Assembly (NCBI GenBank): GCA_033442325.1
Contig: JAWQFM010000002.1
Coordinates: 2,824,354 to 2,840,306, forward strand
Direction: 5' to 3'
Length of the DNA stretch: 15,953 nucleotides
From: Salpingoeca rosetta
Taxonomy: Eukaryota > Protista > Choanoflagellata
Shown: positions 114 to 15,953 of the stretch, piece after piece
Layout: each line of letters opens with the position of its first letter
Numbering within the stretch: position 1 is the stretch's first letter
Made by a program: the position numbers and the translations under genes
Notes under the pieces: generated by a model
Database searches by the model: none
What the model was told of the DNA's origin: nothing
Seen by the model: the letters and a program-made list of their open reading frames with translations, nothing else

Positions 114-2431
114 GGCGGACGTTGTGTGGGTTTCCCCAACCGAATCCCCTTCCTTCTTTTCCCAACCAATCGCCTCTGCTCTGTGTCATCATCTTCATCA
201 GCCTTCCCCATGTGATGTGGAGCTGTTGAGGCGTGATCGAGACAGCGGCCAACACAGGTATTGCAGCAGTGGTGGATATGGTGGATGTGGTGATGTTTTG
301 TGCCTGCCTGCTTGCTTGCTTGTTGGATGCTTGCTTCGTTGTTCTTGTGTGTAGGTGATGCACCCCGCCCACAACATGCTGCATATTCCCATGCGTGGTC
401 CCTTGTGTCCCTCCTTTCGTGTTCTCACCATCACCGGTCGTTGTTGTTCGTCTCTGGTTGGTTTCTCCTTGCCTCACAGGCACGCAGGCAGACATGCAAG
501 CTTGTGCTGGTGCTGCTGGTGCTGCTGTGATGATGGCCGTGCGTGTGCATGTGCGCTGTGCGCCGTGTTTGGGGCTGCACCGATGAAGACAAGGAAGGAC
601 ACGGCCCGTGCCCACCACTCTTCCCCCTTCATCTCCTCTTTCTGCTCCATCAGCGATGACGATGGTGGCCGTGGCATGTGATTGCGGTTCCCTTTTGTTC
701 TGGCTTCGCTGTGGCACGTTGTCTGGCTGGCTGGCTGCATCAAGCACAGGTGAGGATGATCGTTGATGGTTGGTTGGTTGGTGGTGGGCTGAGTTGTGTT
801 GAGTGGTGGGAACCAGGGGGAGGAGGGAAGTGACACGGTGATGGTGGTGGTGGTGCGACGTGGGAGTGCAGAGCGAGAGGGAGATGGAAGGGAAGTGATG
901 GAGGGTGATGATGTTGGTCGGGGGATGGGGGTGCGTGTACACATACATGCACGTGATATCGTGTGGTGGTAATATCACATGACAATGACGCACACATCAG
1001 TGGCTCATTCCTTTTGCTTGTACCTGTGATTGTGATTGCGTGTGATTGTGATGATGACTGCAGCAGGCAACACACGGCGGTGATGCTGGATTGGATTGGC
1101 TGGGGTTGACTGGCCGTTGTGTCGTGTCGCCCATTTCTCTCTCCCTCCGTTACTCAGCTCAACTGGGAACACGGCAATGTGTGCGTTTGTGCGTGTACAT
1201 GTGTGTGCATCGCCATCAACCACGCCGACAGCGATACGATGCACGAGGTGAGGGCACGCAATGCTGTGCGTGTTTGGTGGAAGGGGGTTGAGGGAAGTGG
1301 TGGGAAGGCGTTCATCATGGCCATCATCACCACCACGGCTGTGTATCTGGCCATGTGACCGTGCATTTGGGAGGATGGAGATGGGGAGAGGGATGTTGTC
1401 GTTGGTTGTCGTTGTGGTGGTTGTGTATGCATTGCTGTGCATGCGTGTGCATGGTGCACCGTCTCACTCTACAATGCCATGTGTGACTGTGTGTGTGTGA
1501 CTGCAGATGTGCGTGCGCGTGTGCGCATATATCAGGCAGATGTGTTGATCGACGACGAGGTGAGTGTGTGTGTGTGTGATTGTGGTTGACCTTTGTGTGC
1601 TTGTGCCATCACAACTACACAAAACAACAAGCACATCATCATCATCATTCCACCCCATATGTTGTTGTGTTGTCGACTCACGCATGGCATGCTCACATCA
1701 CCCCTTCCCCTTGCTTCTCTCTCTCTCTCTCTGCTGCTGCACCCNNNNNNNNNNNNNNNNNNNNNNNNNNNNNNNNNNNNNNNNNNNNNNNNNNNNNNNN
1801 NNNNNNNNNNNNNNNNNNNNNNNNNNNNNNNNNNNNNNNNNNNNCTGCAAGGCCTGTGGAGCCTGCGTTGCATTCACACACACAGTGCTGTTCCCCTCTC
1901 CTCTTCTCCCCCTTCTTCTTGTCTCATGAAAACCAACCAACCAAGCAACCAAGCAACCAAGCAAGTCCGCCCTTCAACAAGCAAACGCAAAAAAGCAAAC
2001 AGCAGTTGCCGCAGCAGTGGGCGATTATTTGTGGCATCTTCCACAAATCGCCCAAACACGAACCAACAAGACCAACACACACAAACAAGCAACAGGCGAA
2101 ACGCGAAACGCGAATCAAGGTGCGTGTGTTTGAGTGGGTGGTGGGTTGCGTTGTTTGTGTGCGCGGCTGGCGCAGGGTTGGTGGAGAGGAGGGAGAGGGT
2201 GCGCGTTGTGACGGGCACTCATTGGCGGTCCTGTTGTGGGTGGTCTCGTTTGGTTCCATGGATTGTGTGGGGTGTGGTGGGTGATGGTGTGATGGTGCAC
2301 AGGTGCAAGCAGAGAACACGCACAGCAGCGCCCACACCATGGATGTGTGCAGCGCCAAAGGCATGCAAGGCGTTGCCCACGGTCGGTGAGGCTGACATAT
2401 GTGCTGCACAGGCCCATGGCACGCTGGCACC
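114..2431 (+). pseudogene. Scattered exon-like segments with AG/GT boundaries; possible degenerate gene or unresolved spliced gene
   Basis: Segments flanked by polypyrimidine-AG and GT: 201-258, 355-436 plus 480-586 (..PSFRVLTITG/TQADMQAC..), 1158-1247 (LNWEHGN..INHADSDTMHE), 1507 or 1536-1559 (..ADVLIDDE|GTGAGT) and about 2303-2431. Splice phases do not join into one clean ORF, a gap lies at 1745-1844, and no family is confidently recognised. Confidence 0.2.
1745..1844. other. Assembly gap (100 N)
   Basis: Run of exactly 100 N, a typical placeholder of unknown true size. Confidence 0.99.
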
Positions 2432-7431: not shown

Positions 7432-7531
7432 NNNNNNNNNNNNNNNNNNNNNNNNNNNNNNNNNNNNNNNNNNNNNNNNNNNNNNNNNNNNNNNNNNNNN
7501 NNNNNNNNNNNNNNNNNNNNNNNNNNNNNNN
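7432..7531. other. Assembly gap (100 N)
   Basis: Run of 100 N next to a long (AC)n tract. Confidence 0.99.
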
Positions 7532-10453: not shown

Positions 10454-10558
10454 NNNNNNNNNNNNNNNNNNNNNNNNNNNNNNNNNNNNNNNNNNNNNNN
10501 NNNNNNNNNNNNNNNNNNNNNNNNNNNNNNNNNNNNNNNNNNNNNNNNNNNNNCACTA

Positions 10559-12209: not shown

Positions 12210-13560
12210 TAGACAGAGACAGTCAGACAGACAGAGTAGAGTGTGTGATGTTATTTGTATGTGAGTGTGAGAGAGAGAAAACGTGCAAAGTGATCCACTC
12301 ACGAAATAACAACTCCACCAACCACAACTTCATCAACAAACAACAACAGCAGCAACAACCGCAGCCATGGGCATGTGTGCACGTTTTCTGGCGGCTCTTC
12401 GTCGTGGAACCAGGACGCATCGCTGCCTTTCATCCTGGGATGGAAAGCGAGCAGCAGAGGTGTTGTGCACGTGAGTTCGAAGCATTCTGAGTACAGGCCA
12501 AAGGTGGCAATTTCTGCATGACTGCAAAAATAAGAGTCCGAATACACATTGAGGATTGCCGGGCACGAATCGCACATGTACATGAACGCACGCACACACA
12601 AACAGACACACACAGGCTCTCACAAACAAACAAACAAATAAACAAACAAACAACAAACAAACACACACACACAAACAACAAACAAACAAACACACAAAAC
12701 AAACACACACACACACAAACAACAAACAAACAAACAAACACACAAAACAAACAAACAAACAAACAACAAACAACAAACAAACAAATACACAAACACACAA
12801 CAAACAACAAACAAACAAATACACAAACACACAAAACAAACAAACAAACAAACAAACAAACACACACGCACACACGCATGCTCACTTTCGGAGCTCTTCG
12901 GTTGGAACGGGCTTTGCCAAATCATCGCGTTCCACAGCAGCAAAGATGGGCTGACCCTTGGCAATCTGAACCAACCACAAAGCAGCGTAACATGATCATG
13001 TGCGAATGTGTATGTTTGAGTTTGAGGTGTGTGAGGTGGATTATTATGACGTCATGAGTATGTGCGTGTGTGTACATGTAGTGAGCCCAAACCTTCAAAG
13101 ACCCTGATCGATGTGTGCTTGCAGGCACTTGACTGACCTGCTTCTGCTTGATGGCATCGCTGGAGGGAAAGCGGACGACGTAGTATGGCTCATCCACGCG
13201 TCCAAACACCTCAAACACCTGGCAAATGACGATGTGTTCATGCGCGTGAGTGTTTGGCTGTGTGGGAGTGCGAAGAAAGGGAAGAAGAACAATAACAGCG
13301 CGTGTTTGCGTACAAACCACTGTTCACAGTGTGCACTAACGAAAGCAGAGGTCATTAACACTCACACTCACACTCACACACTCACACACAATCAAACACA
13401 CGCACCCACACTCACACTCACTCACTCACACAATCACACACGCACCCACACTCACACTCACTCACACACAATCACACACATTCACACACACACACAATCA
13501 CACACACACGCACACGCACACGCACGCACACACGCACACACGCACACACACACACACACA

Positions 13561-13629
<69 letters not shown>

Positions 13630-13761
13630 CGCCACCTTGCCCAGCGGAGAGCGGTCTTCGCGCCAGAGAACGGAGCCGACATCAAGCGCTTCAGTGCTGC
13701 CGTTGGAGACGACAACCTTCTCAAAGTGAAAGTAGCACAACAACAGCGCACGCAACACCAT
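10638..13761 (-). CDS. NAF1: H/ACA ribonucleoprotein assembly factor NAF1 (Gar1/Naf1 domain), about 493 aa, 6 exons; start codon uncertain
   Basis: Exons complement(13636-13761, 13138-13218, 12886-12965, 12383-12434, 11945-12083, 10638-11641), GT-AG with phases 0,0,2,0,1 consistent. Spliced ..ALDVGSVLWREDRSPLGK|VFEVFGRVDEPYYVVRFPSSDAIKQKQ|IAKGQPIFAAVERDDLAKPVPTEELRK|MKGSDASWFHDEEPPEN|ALDFSDDEEEAKHRR.. matches NAF1 motifs (G.v.EvFG.V..PyY.vRF; KGSDASW..D.EPP; FSDDE.E), followed by a P/Q-rich tail. The ATG at 13761 is the nearest in-frame start. Confidence 0.92.
10764..11046 (-). repeat. Coding 18-bp tandem repeat, (P/H/L)MQQ(Q/H/L)Q about 14-16 times, in the last NAF1 exon
   Basis: Translation QPMQQHQPMQQLQPMQQQQPMQQHQ..HMQQQQPMQQQQHMQQ; the DNA period is 18 bp. 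Confidence 0.9.
12135..12235. repeat. (GACA)n tetranucleotide microsatellite in a NAF1 intron
   Basis: Read directly. Confidence 0.9.
12621..12873. repeat. Degenerate (CAAA)n low-complexity tract in a NAF1 intron
   Basis: About 250 bp made almost entirely of A and C. Confidence 0.9.
13359..13628. repeat. (CACT)/(CA)n compound microsatellite in NAF1 intron 1
   Basis: Read directly. Confidence 0.9.
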
Positions 13762-13988
13762 CACCACCAGCGCAGGTTGTCCTCTTCGTCCGGTCCACTG
13801 CTGAAAATCAGCCGGAAACTTTAACAAATCGCCAATACTTGCACCCACCAAAACACACACGACACTGCGCACACACAACACTCACTGCACACACAACACT
13901 CACTTACACACACCCACACACACACACACACACTCTCTCTCTCACTACACACAGCACTCACACACTCACTGCACACACACACACACTC

Positions 13989-15839
13989 ATGAAAAGGCTC
14001 AGGATAGCGCTGATTGGGAGCTCTGGTGGTGGGGTGGGCAACGTTGGACGCGAAGCGCAGGATGTGGTGCAATGTGTCGAACAGGAGCTGCGACGATGCG
14101 ACATGCACCTTGTCTCGCTCCTCCTCGTTATGACAGACCAGCCCTTTGACTCTGTCGCCAAAGCAACGCCGCCAACGGCCGGTACACATGCCGTGATGAC
14201 AAACCACTGCGAAGAAGACATGCCACAGCAGCAAGCAGCAGATGCCCTGCATGCAGCCCTGCTGTGGGAACTGGAGACCGACGCCAAACATCCTTCTTCC
14301 GCCGCTACTGTTCCACCCCCACTGCCTTCGACAAACCCCACCGCCGTTTGTACATACAGAGGCGCCCTCGCGCAAGCGAATGAGCGCGCTCGCCAGGCCG
14401 ACGCCGCCCTTGCGCGGCACATTGCAGCAGGCCACATTGATGCGGTCATCACGCTGTCCAGCGACCCCCTCAACGTCAACAGTCGCACAATCAAGGCATG
14501 CATCCAGGCACGCGTCCCTGTTGTCGGCACCGGCGGCACATCTGTGAGCGAGATCACGCTTGCAGGTGCGCGTGTCATCGGCATGTCCGGTGGTTCCGTG
14601 GCCACCACGCCACTCACTCTCGCGGCCTCCAATACTTCGGCGCTGGCAGCCCACTTTGGTCGCGTGTACACGCCGCCCGTTCGCGTGCGCCTGGCCGCGT
14701 ACCACTCCGTGCTGGACGCCACCCTCCCAATTGTCTTGGGAATCTCGCTCGTCTGCGTGCTCGTGACAACACCAGCTCTCCTCCAGCCACACCAAGAGCA
14801 CCAGCACCAACACCAACACCAACAGCCGCAGCAGGACAACTCCGGCTTTGAAGCAGCCCACGGCCTTGATGATATCATGCCTGCCATCGCTCACATCAAT
14901 TTCCAGCAGGTGATGGCATTGATAGCACGTGCGACCAACAGTGCAGCGGCAGCGCTGACCATGGCCCCCACGGTCGCTGCGGGTGTGCTCACGGCCACCC
15001 AGCACCGTTACGTGGGTGTGGAGGCAATCCTTGCTTGCATTGTCGCGTGCGCGTGCGGACCAGACAACCTTGCCGCCGGCGTTGTGTCTGCTGCACTCGT
15101 GTGTGCACTGCTCCCTCGCGTCTCGGCCGTCCTGGCCCGGCTGGGCTGCCCCGCCACCGCCACCGCCATCACCGCGTGTCCCATCACGGGGGTTGCGGCC
15201 GGCACCACAGCTGCGTTCATATCCGCAATCACTGCGGCTGTTGTTCTGCAGTGGCCATTGGGGGCGACGCTGGCGTTTGCACGCGGACCAACAGCACAGG
15301 CGCTGCTTTTCTCGCCACTTGCTGCTGCCGGCATTGTGGGCGCAGCCGTGGGCGTGTTCACCCGCTACGCGGCAAATGTTGGATGGTATCACTACTTTAT
15401 TTTGCCTCTCATCCTCTTGGAGATGCAAGGGCGACAGCAGCTGCTCCTGAGAGGCATTGGTGATGGTGGTGGTGGTGCTGCTGCTGCCAGCGTTGATGGC
15501 GTGGGTGCAGATGCGTTCGTTGTTGCAATCACTCGAATTCTCGATGCCCTGGTCATTCGCAGCAGCGGTGAGCAGGGGGTGGACAGCGCAAGGGACGGCT
15601 ATGATGGTCGTGGTGGCGCTGCTGGTGTTGGCGCTGCGCAGGGAACGCTGTCGTTGTTGGGTGCACATGATCTGTGTGCTTTATGTATGACAAGCGCAGG
15701 CGTGTGTGCAGGGGTGCTGGTGCGAAGCAAGCTGCCATCATGGTCGTCGTGCGTGATGAGGAGACCAACTCACCTCTCCCACAACACCGCCACCAACAAG
15801 GGCAACAACAACAACAAGAGCTGCAACAACAAGGGCTGC

Positions 15840-15922
<83 letters not shown>

Positions 15923-15953
15923 CGGACCGACAACAACAACAACAACAACAACA
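13989..15953 (+). CDS. Bacterial-type 'PTS sugar transporter'-like membrane protein (N-terminal soluble alpha/beta domain plus EIIC-like polytopic domain); 3' end outside the window
   Basis: Manually translated: 655 codons from ATG 13989 with no stop, so it is missing from the ORF track. MKRLRIALIGSSGGGVG..TDQPFDS..YRGALAQANERARQADAALARHIAAGHIDAVITLSSDPLNVNSRTIKACIQARVPVVGTGGTSVSEITLAGARVIGMSGGSVATT..SALAAHFGRVYTP, then several hydrophobic helices, ..GCPATATAI..VGWYHYFILPLILLEM..LSLLGAHDLCALCMTSAG. The motif order matches my recollection of bacterial proteins annotated PTS sugar transporter (IAxLGSSGG, IDGxIxxSxDP, PxVGTGGTS, GxYHxxILPLxLLEM, SFLGAxDxxxLxMxxAG). The ORF is certain; the family call is recalled, not searched. 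Confidence 0.82.
15804..15953 (+). repeat. (AAC)n trinucleotide tract, in frame as poly-Asn (28 consecutive N at 15840-15923), then GP and poly-Thr
   Basis: Read directly in the frame of the 13989 ORF. Confidence 0.9.

What the first reader, a model, noticed from the sequence alone, without database searches (positions are those of the whole stretch)
13989..15953. Hidden uninterrupted ORF encoding a bacterial PTS-permease-like protein in a eukaryotic genome (candidate horizontal transfer)
Seen: a 655-codon open plus-strand frame missed by the ORF track, needing no intron over about 2 kb, whereas its neighbours TRM112, IF2 and the conserved part of NAF1 are split into mostly short exons. The motifs GSSGGG (14016), IDAVITLSSDP (14436), GTGGTS (14526), GWYHYFILPLILLEM (15381) and LSLLGAHDLCALCMTSAG (15648) occur in the order I recall for bacterial proteins annotated 'PTS sugar transporter'. 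Established: the PEP:sugar phosphotransferase system (EI, HPr, EIIA/B/C) is prokaryotic and no canonical system is known in eukaryotes. Inference: a bacterivorous protist acquired an EIIC-like carrier and uses it without the relay, as a facilitator, a sensor, or a food-vacuole sugar or sugar-phosphate transporter. It sits on the same gap-free stretch as NAF1 and carries host-style microsatellite insertions, so contamination is unlikely.
Basis: partly seen in the sequence, partly recalled or inferred. Interest (0 to 1): 0.88.

Follow-up and report, generated by a model that had tools for sequence, protein, structure and literature searches.

The report
EIIC-like transporter gene in a choanoflagellate
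A transcribed, intron-free gene at the end of a Salpingoeca rosetta contig encodes a membrane carrier related to the bacterial PTS sugar permease (EIIC); it belongs to an undescribed two-domain family shared by many protists, so it is not a recent bacterial import.

Summary
Window 13989-15953 (+) is a 655-codon open frame, all five motifs sit at the stated coordinates, and it is the annotated S. rosetta hypothetical protein (GCA_000188695.1). RNA contigs that splice the neighbouring NAF1 gene cover 13955-15794 without a joint.

The EIIC reading is supported at superfamily level, not as Pfam membership.
- There is no PF02378 hit.
- The family profile matches Fru-type EIIC domains (hhalign 94%, E 1.4e-7), with its GD[FY]VEAxYP motif on GITEGAIPF.
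- A pLDDT-94.5 model of a full-length member matches PtsG, MalT and ChbC at Z 15.5-18.8, against 10.5 or less for everything else.

The N-terminal domain is a generic alpha/beta fold, not a detectable EIIB. No HPr, EI or canonical EIIC was found in the genome.

The recent-HGT inference is not supported. The window groups with another choanoflagellate inside a clade whose 13 traceable members (11 in the tree) are all eukaryotic: choanoflagellates, a diplonemid, diatoms and other ochrophytes, a haptophyte. All known bacterial members lie on the other side.

The gene is cut by the contig end. The roughly 118 C-terminal profile positions, including the key Glu motif, are unassembled. The function is inferred: a PTS-independent elevator-type carrier of unknown substrate.

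The parts
13955..13988 (+). 5' leader with a (CA)n-type repeat. RNA and DNA unitigs break here.
   Evidence: Sequence read. The long RNA contigs start at 13955 and short repeat contigs pile up at 13955-13989.
13989..15953 (+). Partial coding sequence (655 codons, no stop) of a two-domain EIIC-like protein. It is cut by the contig end.
   Evidence: profile positions 1-420 of 538, E 2.5e-106; unspliced RNA contig 13955-15794.
13989..14687 (+). N-terminal soluble alpha/beta domain (aa 1-233). It carries the conserved loops GSSGGG (14016), SSDP (within 14436-14468), GTGGTS (14526) and GGSVATT (14589).
   Evidence: AF2 model of this stretch: pLDDT 83.9, pTM 0.83. Flavodoxin/PBP-lobe-like, best Z 10.0 on a flat plateau. 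Invariant S157, G182 and G202 are kept.
14160..14237 (+). Lineage-specific insert in the N-domain (aa 58-83), modelled with low confidence.
   Evidence: columns filled in fewer than 15% of family rows. (pLDDT below 50 at aa 68-78).
14700..15953 (+). EIIC-like membrane domain, incomplete. Hydrophobic segments run from aa 238 to 580.
   Evidence: Homology to the modelled family member, whose residues 186-499 match PtsG, MalT and ChbC at Z 15.5-18.8. hhalign against Fru-type EIIC gives E 1.4e-7. Hydrophobic scan.
14811..14903 (+). Insert (aa 275-305) that begins with a His/Gln microsatellite.
   Evidence: The DNA of this tract matches at least 10 other loci of the same genome at 80-95% identity.
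15381..15425 (+). Core motif GWYHYFILPLILLEM, with family-invariant Y467, H468 (15390-15392) and P473, and near-invariant E478.
   Evidence: By inference it corresponds to the His-bearing hairpin of EIIC (PtsG H211/H212).
15432..15644 (+). 71-aa insert (aa 482-552) between the LLEM and LGAHD motifs. A similar insert occurs at the same place in the closest homologue, P0002.
15840..15953 (+). (AAC)n then (ACA)n microsatellite, read as poly-Asn (aa 618-645) and poly-Thr (aa 648-655). The contig ends here.
   Evidence: All Logan contigs stop at 15794. P0002 has an acidic/Gln low-complexity insert in the same loop and then continues with the conserved C-terminus.
12885..13715 (-). Spliced exons of the upstream NAF1/Gar1-family neighbour. 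They provide context showing that the ORF lies in a eukaryotic chromosome.
   Evidence: Spliced RNA contigs with CT..AC joint ends. PF04410 exon hit at 13138-13230, minus strand. NCBI gene model on the minus strand.

Best explanation
The ORF is the first four fifths or so of a real, single-copy, transcribed and intron-free Salpingoeca rosetta gene.

It encodes a two-domain membrane protein:
- an N-terminal soluble alpha/beta domain (inferred to be cytoplasmic) with four conserved Gly/Ser/Thr-rich loops;
- a membrane domain homologous to the EIIC permease of the bacterial PTS (glucose-fructose-lactose superfamily, closest by sequence to the fructose/mannitol type).

It belongs to a distinct family that Pfam does not capture. 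That family occurs sparsely in bacteria and widely but patchily in protists.

Shown:
- homology and fold of the family;
- retention of all invariant residues in the window copy;
- expression;
- no HPr, EI N-domain or canonical EIIC found in this genome;
- placement in a eukaryotic clade.

Inferred:
- It works as a PTS-independent, elevator-type carrier for a small polar solute.
- The solute is held by the invariant Tyr-His of the GYYH..LPLILLEME segment and by the invariant Glu of the GD[FY]VEAxYP motif, which lies beyond the contig end in this copy.
- The N-domain occupies the place of EIIB in FruA-type permeases. It acts as a ligand- or phosphate-binding regulatory or coupling module.

The substrate is unknown. 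Bacterial operons point weakly to a compound handled together with an NMT1-type ABC importer and histidine/imidazole-type enzymes.
For: Reality and expression.

Family: (206 representatives).

EIIC homology by sequence:
- The family profile hits genuine IIA2-IIB-IIC permeases at E 1.5e-7 to 5.7e-4 per genome.
- The four of these that were fetched and scanned (E 1.5e-7 to 2.7e-4) all carry PF02378 domains.
- hhalign gives 94% probability, E 1.4e-7, over 271 columns, with GDfVEAcYPf aligned on GITEGAIPF.
- TIGR01995 gives a weak hit.
- One of 70 members touches PF02378.

EIIC homology by fold, using the AF2 model with pLDDT 94.5:
- The Foldseek top 8 are all EIIC.
- VIA-align gives PtsG Z 18.8 over 304 aa, V. 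cholerae IIC 17.9, MalT 17.6 and ChbC 15.5; the next hit is 10.5.
- ESM Atlas lists canonical EIIC clusters at TM 0.5-0.6.

Role of Glu and His in EIIC: PtsG E298, H211 and H212 bind glucose OH-6, and transport is elevator-type (PMC11393339).

No relay: no PF00381, PF05524 or PF02378 in G000, while the control genomes ring. No Fru-type IIA or IIB among 180 neighbour ORFs of 13 bacterial loci.

Eukaryotic clade.

Bacterial operons.
Against: - No transport, binding or localisation data exist for any member.
- The window copy lacks the C-terminal ~118 profile positions, which hold the Glu motif. They were not found elsewhere in the assembly, so completeness of the gene is inferred from homologues.
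- In the closest homologue, P0002, the motif reads GDYVEAGIA: Glu is kept but Tyr-Pro is lost.
- The window protein carries a 71-aa insert next to the core His motif.
- The fold was modelled on a bacterial member, not on the window's membrane domain.
- The equivalence of the family His with PtsG H211/H212 was not tested residue by residue.
- Pfam PF02378 is not reached.
- The strand of the RNA cannot be read from contigs.
Confidence: 0.7

Rival explanations
1. Recent, lineage-specific horizontal transfer. S. rosetta or its immediate ancestors took an EIIC-like gene from prey bacteria.
For: - The gene is intronless while its neighbours are split into short exons.
- GC is 0.618 against 0.544 for the window.
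- The EIIC superfamily is otherwise prokaryotic (PMC11393339).
- Bacterial members of the same family exist.
Against: - The window groups with P0002 (SH-aLRT 100), and in the full-length tree with the acanthoecid choanoflagellate Helgoeca nana (81).
- These lie inside a 72-row clade whose 11 traceable rows are all eukaryotic.
- All known bacterial members lie on the other side of a branch with SH-aLRT 97 (full length) or 94 (rooted membrane-domain tree).
- The best bacterial hits are only about 26-31% identical over 60-80% of the query.
- The ORF holds host-type microsatellites.
Confidence: 0.05
2. Group translocator with a built-in chemistry module. The N-terminal domain is a new phosphoryl- or other group-transfer enzyme that modifies the solute at the inward-facing site, in functional replacement of EIIB/EIIA/HPr/EI.
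For: - The N-domain sits N-terminal to the IIC domain, as EIIB does in FruA-type permeases (architecture seen).
- Its most conserved positions are small residues in loops after beta-strands (GSSGGG, SxDP, GTGGTS, GGSVATT; invariant S, G, G). This is typical of phosphate-binding crevices.
- The fusion is conserved in bacteria and eukaryotes.
Against: - There is no relation to EIIB by profile comparison (probability 0.2%).
- No conserved Cys or His appears among the N-domain invariants.
- Fold matches are a flat plateau of sugar-binding PBP/LacI lobes, HemD and flavodoxin-like domains at Z 8.3-10, with no kinase or phosphotransferase standing out.
- Three members weakly hit Peripla_BP_4, which suggests binding rather than catalysis.
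Confidence: 0.15
3. Sensor or transceptor rather than carrier. The EIIC-like domain binds an external solute and the N-domain relays the signal, with little net transport.
For: - The N-domain resembles one lobe of ligand-binding PBP/LacI proteins.
- In bacteria the gene often stands first, next to a complete ABC importer that could do the actual uptake (7 of 13 loci).
- Regulators (RpiR, GntR/UTRA) lie in the same clusters.
Against: - There is no output domain (kinase, cyclase, DNA-binding) in any member.
- The transport-site residues (Glu, His) are invariant.
- The L011 operon couples it translationally between an ABC ATPase and a dehydrogenase, like a metabolic gene.
Confidence: 0.08
4. Decaying or truncated gene. 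The reading frame ends just past the repeat, and the locus is a transcribed pseudogene or an assembly or contamination artefact.
For: - The contig ends in a microsatellite, and the C-terminal segment was not found in the other 67 contigs.
- The NCBI model stops at 539 aa.
- There are several large low-complexity inserts.
Against: - All 6 invariant positions are kept, and of the 21 near-invariant positions that fall before the contig end, 19 are identical and one is conservative.
- There are 655 codons without a stop.
- The RNA contig has depth 14 and 74 in two runs that show no intronic DNA signal.
- The stretch is held by 20 runs from 8 studies.
- P0002 has an insert in the same loop and then the conserved C-terminus.
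- The gene lies on the same gap-free sequence as the spliced NAF1.
Confidence: 0.04

Closest known systems
PTS EIIC permeases of the glucose-fructose-lactose superfamily (Pfam PF02378): E. coli PtsG IIC (8qsr), V. cholerae IIC-Glc (9lgt), B. cereus MalT (6bvg), ChbC (3qnq); by sequence closest to Fru/Mtl-type IIC
   Same: - Same membrane fold: Z 15.5-18.8 over about 305 residues.
- Profile-level sequence homology: E 1.4e-7.
- The invariant Glu motif aligns with GITE.
- There is a conserved His-bearing segment upstream.
- An elevator-type carrier mechanism is expected.
   Different: - It does not reach the PF02378 threshold.
- It has no EIIB or EIIA domain or gene, and no EI or HPr was found in the host.
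- It carries a different N-terminal domain of about 185-230 aa.
- Its own signature is GYYH..LPLILLEME and LGAxD..LC.
- It has a large eukaryotic clade.
Uncharacterised bacterial proteins auto-annotated 'PTS sugar transporter' (e.g. Kroppenstedtia pulmonis P0171, Georgenia sp. P0183, Sporolactobacillus spathodeae locus L017) or 'fructose-specific PTS IIC component' (JGI, P0173)
   Same: - Same family and same two-domain architecture.
- ESM Atlas clusters of this name match the full-length model at TM 0.83-0.89.
   Different: - The bacterial members form the other side of the tree and carry GSSGGN rather than GSSGGG/S in the first loop.
- They are 500-550 aa with no low-complexity inserts.
- They are often the first gene beside an NMT1-type ABC importer.
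- None is characterised.
FruA-type EIIB'BC architecture (a cytoplasmic domain N-terminal to IIC)
   Same: A soluble alpha/beta domain precedes the IIC-like domain, in the same order as IIB-IIC in the permeases of loci L023, L025 and L026.
   Different: - The N-domain shows no EIIB relationship (hhalign probability 0.2%).
- It is twice as long.
- It lacks the phosphorylatable Cys of the C-x-x-G-I-A-H-T loop.
Type-I periplasmic-binding-protein / LacI-family sugar-binding lobes, HemD and flavodoxin-like domains (for the N-domain only)
   Same: - Three-layer alpha/beta sandwich: Z 8.3-10.0 over about 120-130 residues.
- Three of 70 members give weak Peripla_BP_4 hits.
   Different: - It has only one lobe.
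- The scores form a plateau with no outstanding match.
- Foldseek finds nothing below E 1e-3.
- There is no significant PDB sequence match.
- Membership is not claimed.

Membership tests
PTS EIIC, glucose-fructose-lactose superfamily (PF02378) | Sequence match to the Pfam PTS_EIIC model above its gathering score | tested here: not met
   - The window ORF has no PF02378 hit even at E <= 1.
- Only 1 of 70 family members touches it individually, at E 1.9e-5.
- One further cluster carries a precomputed PF02378 hit.
PTS EIIC, glucose-fructose-lactose superfamily (PF02378) | Remote homology at profile level to genuine EIIC domains | tested here: met
   - Profile A1 hits permeases in Bacillota genomes at E 1.5e-7 to 5.7e-4.
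- The four fetched and scanned (E 1.5e-7 to 2.7e-4) carry PF02378 domains.
- hhalign of A1 against A2 gives 94% probability, E 1.4e-7, 271 columns.
- The window row matches A1 at E 2.5e-106.
PTS EIIC, glucose-fructose-lactose superfamily (PF02378) | EIIC membrane fold (scaffold plus transport domain with re-entrant hairpins) | tested here: met
   - Shown for the family representative P0007 (pLDDT 94.5).
- PtsG Z 18.8, V. cholerae IIC 17.9, MalT 17.6, ChbC 15.5; the next hit is 10.5.
- The Foldseek top 8 are all EIIC.
- For the window's own, incomplete membrane domain this is inferred by homology. It was not modelled.
PTS EIIC, glucose-fructose-lactose superfamily (PF02378) | Conserved substrate-site Glu in a G-I-T-E-like motif | tested here: inconclusive
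   - Glu is invariant in 53 C-terminal segments of the family (G16 and E20 of A5) and aligns with the Glu of GITEGAIPF.
- In the window copy the motif lies beyond the contig end and was not found elsewhere.
PTS EIIC, glucose-fructose-lactose superfamily (PF02378) | Conserved His in the first hairpin at the substrate site (PtsG H211/H212) | tested here: inconclusive
   - The family has an invariant Tyr-His (window Y467-H468) upstream of the Glu motif.
- Residue-level structural equivalence could not be checked, because model coordinates are not exposed.
Complete PTS (EI, HPr, EIIA, EIIB, EIIC) | Presence of the phosphorelay partners EI and HPr in the same genome | tested here: not met
   PF00381 (HPr) and PF05524 (EI N-domain) give no match in G000 at E <= 0.1, while 7 of 14 control genomes ring. 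Only this one eukaryote was tested.
Complete PTS (EI, HPr, EIIA, EIIB, EIIC) | EIIB (and EIIA) domain fused to, or encoded beside, the permease | tested here: not met
   - N-domain against Fru-type EIIB: hhalign probability 0.2%.
- No EIIB appears among the 50 best fold matches of the N-domain.
- No Fru-type IIA or IIB was found among 180 neighbour ORFs of 13 bacterial loci. Only Fru-type queries were used.
Unnamed two-domain 'GSSGG - EIIC-like' family (auto-named 'PTS sugar transporter') | N-terminal alpha/beta domain with GSSGG, SxDP, GTGG[TS]S and GGSVATT loops, followed by a membrane domain with GYYH..LPLILLEME and LGAxD..LC | tested here: met
   - All motifs are present at 14016, 14436, 14526, 14589, 15381 and 15648.
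- All six invariant positions are kept, and of the 21 near-invariant positions before the contig end 19 are identical and one is conservative.
- E 2.5e-106 to the family profile.
Unnamed two-domain 'GSSGG - EIIC-like' family (auto-named 'PTS sugar transporter') | C-terminal N-x-L-x-G-D-[FY]-V-E-A-x-Y-P and S-A-Y-L-P-x-P motifs | not testable with these tools
   The contig ends at 15953. All read-derived contigs stop at the repeat. The C-terminal profile A5 finds only a chance hit (E 1.5) in the assembly.

The most novel reading that the evidence does not exclude
Eukaryotes possess a genuine, widely distributed family of EIIC-superfamily carriers. It is found in choanoflagellates, diplonemids, diatoms and other ochrophytes, haptophytes and at least one intron-rich lineage. 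It works without any PTS relay, and its conserved N-terminal domain is a new coupling or gating module. Its substrate would not be a classical PTS sugar but a small nitrogenous or imidazole-type metabolite, as hinted by bacterial operons that pair it with an NMT1-type ABC importer, a histidine-ammonia-lyase-like enzyme, histidinol-dehydrogenase-like and IGPD-like enzymes, M20 amidohydrolases and a HutC-type regulator. That would make it a previously unseen route for exchange of such compounds in marine protists.
Probability: 0.2. Interest if true: 0.8.

Novelty: new variant of a known kind. Interest (0 to 1): 0.62.

Why it matters
The PTS is described as completely absent from eukaryotes (PMC11393339), and its permease fold is treated as a prokaryotic hallmark and drug target.

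This work shows a distinct branch of the EIIC superfamily with these properties:
- It is fused to an uncharacterised soluble domain.
- It is not captured by Pfam.
- It is expressed in the closest unicellular relatives of animals.
- It is shared by ecologically dominant marine protists, apparently without the phosphorelay.

This gives a concrete, testable case of how an elevator-type group-translocation permease can be re-used as a stand-alone carrier. It corrects a misleading automatic annotation ('PTS sugar transporter'). It also warns that 'bacterial-looking and intronless' does not equal recent HGT. S. rosetta is genetically tractable, so localisation and knock-out are feasible.

Tried and rejected
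- Pfam and NCBIfam on the window ORF gave nothing useful.
- The overlapping minus-strand ORF 13821-15668 (615 aa) has no family hit and no support. I treat it as a by-product of GC-rich coding sequence.
- I tried four ways to find the missing C-terminus. Fetching beyond the window hit the contig end. The P0002 C-terminus against G000 found nothing. The whole-family profile covered only positions 1-420. The C-terminal profile A5 gave a chance hit at E 1.5. Read-derived contigs all break at the repeat.
- The PDB sequence search with the family profile placed ChbC at E 0.6, which is not significant. The N-domain profile gave nothing significant.
- The N-domain as a divergent EIIB was rejected.
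- The N-domain in the ESM feature atlas gave no usable hit. Foldseek on the N-domain found nothing below E 1e-3.
- A riboswitch as a functional clue: the only Rfam hit in 7 bacterial loci is a SAM riboswitch that belongs to a divergent metN-type gene.
- Mechanical ORFs of the window's neighbours gave no Pfam hits because those genes are split. NAF1 was confirmed with the family search instead.
- Literature searches for eukaryotic EIIC homologues, for PTS or permease mentions in the Monosiga HGT survey, and for the identity of GCA_054601695.1 found nothing.
Full report
OBSERVATION

Window 13989-15953 (+) translates into 655 codons with no stop. The ORF tool does not list it because it runs off the end of the source. 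The window is G000:C2:2824354-2840306, and the contig ends at the last base of the window.

The last 5.4 kb are identical to NCBI record GL833044.1 of GCA_000188695.1. There the frame is annotated as a 539-aa protein, P0001. That assembly is Salpingoeca rosetta.

ATG 13989 is the only in-frame ATG after the upstream stop. N runs occur only at 1745-1844, 7432-7531 and 10454-10553, so the ORF and its upstream neighbour share uninterrupted sequence.

EXPRESSION AND GENE STRUCTURE

Twenty public runs from eight studies hold the stretch. I laid four of them on 12500-15953.

- X11 and X19 behave as RNA. Their contigs join 12885-12965, 13138-13220 and 13638-13715, with CT..AC ends at the listed joint (a minus-strand GT..AG intron), and they have zero depth in the skipped parts.
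- X17 and X6 are contiguous there, so they are DNA.
- Both RNA runs carry a single contig over 13955-15794 with no joint, at depth 14 and 74. The neighbour has depth 190 and 920.

The gene is therefore transcribed and unspliced over everything that can be assembled. Contigs cannot give the strand.

The spliced neighbour carries a Gar1/Naf1-family exon at 13138-13230, minus strand. This confirms the NAF1 claim and the eukaryotic chromosomal setting. The repeat tracts inside the ORF match many other loci of the genome.

WHAT THE PROTEIN IS

Pfam and NCBIfam give nothing for the ORF. Homologues do exist:
- 10 in the word-indexed search;
- 206 cluster representatives at E <= 1e-3 in the exhaustive search.

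Full-length members are about 500-600 aa and share these motifs: GSSGG, SxDP, GTGG[TS]S, GGSVATT, GYYH..LPLILLEME, LGAxD..LC, N.L.GD[FY]VEAxYP and SAYLPxP.

The window copy matches the family profile at E 2.5e-106, but only over positions 1-420 of 538. It keeps all six invariant positions. Of the 21 near-invariant positions that fall before the contig end, 19 are identical and one is a conservative change.

RELATION TO EIIC

Sequence evidence:
- The family profile picks up other proteins in Bacillota genomes at E 1.5e-7 to 5.7e-4.
- I fetched four of them (E 1.5e-7 to 2.7e-4). Three are IIA2-IIB-IIC permeases and one is a stand-alone IIC, and all have genuine PF02378 domains.
- Profile-profile comparison with these gives 94% probability, E 1.4e-7, over 271 columns.
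- In that alignment GDfVEAcYPf lies on GITEGAIPF, Glu on Glu and Pro on Pro.

Structure evidence:
- An AlphaFold model of the compact member P0007, built with 70 sequences, has pLDDT 94.5 and pTM 0.90.
- The eight best Foldseek hits are all EIIC proteins or models.
- The Foldseek-independent aligner gives, for model residues about 186-499: PtsG Z 18.8 (304 aligned, rmsd 4.2), V. cholerae IIC-Glc 17.9, MalT 17.6 and ChbC 15.5. It then drops to 10.5.
- The ESM Atlas lists canonical EIIC clusters at TM 0.5-0.6.

In PtsG the motif Glu (E298) and H211/H212 hold glucose OH-6, and the protein works as an elevator.

I conclude that the membrane domain is a divergent member of the glucose-fructose-lactose EIIC superfamily. 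It is not a member of Pfam PF02378 as currently defined: only 1 of 70 members touches it individually.

THE N-TERMINAL DOMAIN

The window's own residues 1-233 fold with pLDDT 83.9. Only the lineage-specific insert is poorly modelled.

The best matches form a flat plateau at Z 8.3-10. They are single lobes of sugar-binding PBP/LacI proteins, uroporphyrinogen-III synthase and flavodoxin-like domains. Foldseek finds nothing below 1e-3, and the PDB sequence search finds nothing significant. Three members give weak Peripla_BP_4 hits. There is no relation to Fru-type EIIB.

The domain precedes the IIC-like domain, as EIIB does in FruA-type permeases. By inference it is therefore cytoplasmic. Its function is unknown.

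NO RELAY

No HPr, EI N-domain or canonical EIIC was found in the S. rosetta genome, while the same searches ring in 7 of 14 control genomes. No Fru-type IIA or IIB lies among 180 ORFs around 13 bacterial copies.

ORIGIN

Bacterial members:
- Sporolactobacillus.
- About 10 of 100 of its relatives, but only 2 of 400 genomes drawn evenly from its phylum.
- Kroppenstedtia and Georgenia.
- Pseudomonadota clusters in the Atlas.

Tree of 100 full-length rows:
- It splits at SH-aLRT 97 into 28 rows that hold every known bacterial member and 72 rows that hold the window.
- The window pairs with P0002 from Tara metagenomes (100), and then with P0042 (81).

Members of the 72-row clade that could be traced:
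- P0042: Helgoeca nana, a choanoflagellate.
- P0045: Namystynia karyoxenos, a diplonemid.
- P0092: Phaeothamnion.
- P0012: Mallomonas.
- The P0052 cluster: Proboscia.
- P0057: Attheya.
- The P0117 cluster (member P0193): beside RUN-RhoGAP-TLD and Mpv17/PMP22 genes.
- The P0009 cluster (member P0166): beside WD40 and F-box genes.
- P0047: beside a class-C GPCR.
- P0116: on a gene-sparse contig.

With the window that makes 11 traced rows of 72. Two further eukaryotic members were traced outside that first tree's clade: Emiliania huxleyi EMIHUDRAFT_222267, found later, and P0032 (below). None of the 13 is bacterial.

Rooted tree, using Fru-type EIIC on the membrane domain:
- The 72 clade rows stay together (94).
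- P0032 is their sister (88).
- 26 bacterial rows lie on the other side (65).

P0032 is itself eukaryotic. Its product is spread over at least 18 small exons across 19 kb in a 29.5%-GC genome, beside eIF3m and phosphatidylserine synthase.

Eukaryote-wide (patchy) inheritance is supported and nesting within bacteria is not.

Caveats:
- These are quick trees with SH-aLRT support only.
- Compositional heterogeneity was flagged.
- The outgroup sits on a long branch.
- Only 11 of the 72 rows of the clade were traced.
- Pseudomonadota may be under-sampled.

An ancient bacterial origin of the eukaryotic clade is plausible, because the superfamily is otherwise prokaryotic. Neither the direction nor the number of transfers is shown.

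FUNCTION

Shown: a conserved two-domain EIIC-like protein that is expressed, in a genome where no relay was found.

Inferred: a PTS-independent elevator carrier for a small polar solute.

Bacterial context gives a weak lead:
- In 7 of 13 loci the gene is co-directional with, and next to, an NMT1-type ABC importer (SBP, permease, ATPase). In L011 its start and stop codons overlap the neighbours'.
- The clusters also hold, in three different arrangements:
  - a histidine-ammonia-lyase-family enzyme;
  - two M20 amidohydrolases and an RpiR regulator;
  - an SDR plus a histidinol-dehydrogenase-family enzyme;
  - a Zn-ADH and a 2-hydroxyacid dehydrogenase;
  - an IGPD-like protein with a HutC-type GntR regulator.

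This suggests a histidine- or imidazole-related or polyol-like compound. It proves nothing for the eukaryotic proteins.

STATE OF THE WINDOW COPY

The gene is incomplete because the assembly stops in (AAC)n/(ACA)n, at 15840-15953. The closest homologue has a low-complexity insert in the same loop and then the conserved C-terminus, so I expect the same here.

Three searches of the other contigs failed to find that C-terminus, and read contigs break at the repeat.

The window protein also has inserts at aa 58-83, 106-113, 275-305 and 482-552. The last lies beside the core His motif and is shared in position with P0002.

VERDICT

- 'EIIC-like' is supported at superfamily level.
- 'Canonical PTS permease' is not supported.
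- 'Recent acquisition by a bacterivorous protist' is not supported.

I found no paper describing eukaryotic members of this family. I rate it a new variant of a known kind.

Two earlier notes of the scan cover this same stretch. One is this finding. The other proposes that the N-domain replaces the relay; I could test that only partly.

Noticed in passing
Bacterial loci L011, L017, L030-L040 (family gene at e.g. L030:7995-9515, L033:7980-9518, L039:6614-8242): Across 13 bacterial copies the gene recurs beside an NMT1-type ABC importer (7 of 13 loci). It also recurs with enzymes of histidine/imidazole type: a histidine-ammonia-lyase-family protein (3 loci), a histidinol-dehydrogenase-family protein plus an SDR (2 loci), and an IGPD-like protein plus a HutC-type GntR/UTRA regulator (2 loci). 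Two M20 amidohydrolases and an RpiR regulator also recur. This may be an uncharacterised catabolic cluster.
   Followed up: partly
L042:8001-27412 (NCBI GCA_054601695.1, contig BAAHQB010000030.1): A eukaryotic member of the family (P0032) is split into at least 18 exons of 14-35 codons over 19 kb, in a 29.5%-GC genome, flanked by eIF3m and phosphatidylserine synthase genes. The organism could not be identified here. This copy branches nearest the bacteria/eukaryote split.
   Followed up: partly
window 15432-15644 and the same place in P0002: A 60-70-residue insert sits between the LLEM and LGAHD motifs of the membrane core, only in the window protein and its Tara relative. The two inserts are partly similar at their start (RQQLLL and QQQLLM). 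Its effect on the hairpin that carries the invariant His is unknown.
   Followed up: no
L020:3266-3373 (+): A SAM riboswitch (RF00162, 98.5 bits) lies 200 bp from the family gene, but on the opposite strand. It leads a MetN-type ABC ATPase with a NIL domain, so it is unrelated to the family gene.
   Followed up: yes
window 13821-15668 (-): A 615-codon ORF lies antisense to the gene and has no Pfam or NCBIfam hit. It is most likely a side effect of the GC-rich codon usage of the sense frame.
   Followed up: partly
window 1745-1844, 7432-7531, 10454-10553: There are three runs of exactly 100 N (scaffold gaps). The public protein collection holds the last 5.4 kb after the third gap as a separate record. 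This is why the annotated model (539 aa) is short and partial.
   Followed up: yes
L045:5375-7773 (-): Beside the eukaryotic family member P0047 lie adjacent gene calls for a 7tm_3 domain and a Peripla_BP_4 domain. They are probably one class-C GPCR split by the prokaryotic gene caller.
   Followed up: no
ESM Atlas rows 1-2: Two clusters auto-named 'PTS sugar transporter' (57 and 76 members, mostly Pseudomonadota, no common Pfam) match the whole two-domain model at TM 0.83-0.89. The family therefore reaches a third bacterial phylum, which my trees may not sample.
   Followed up: no
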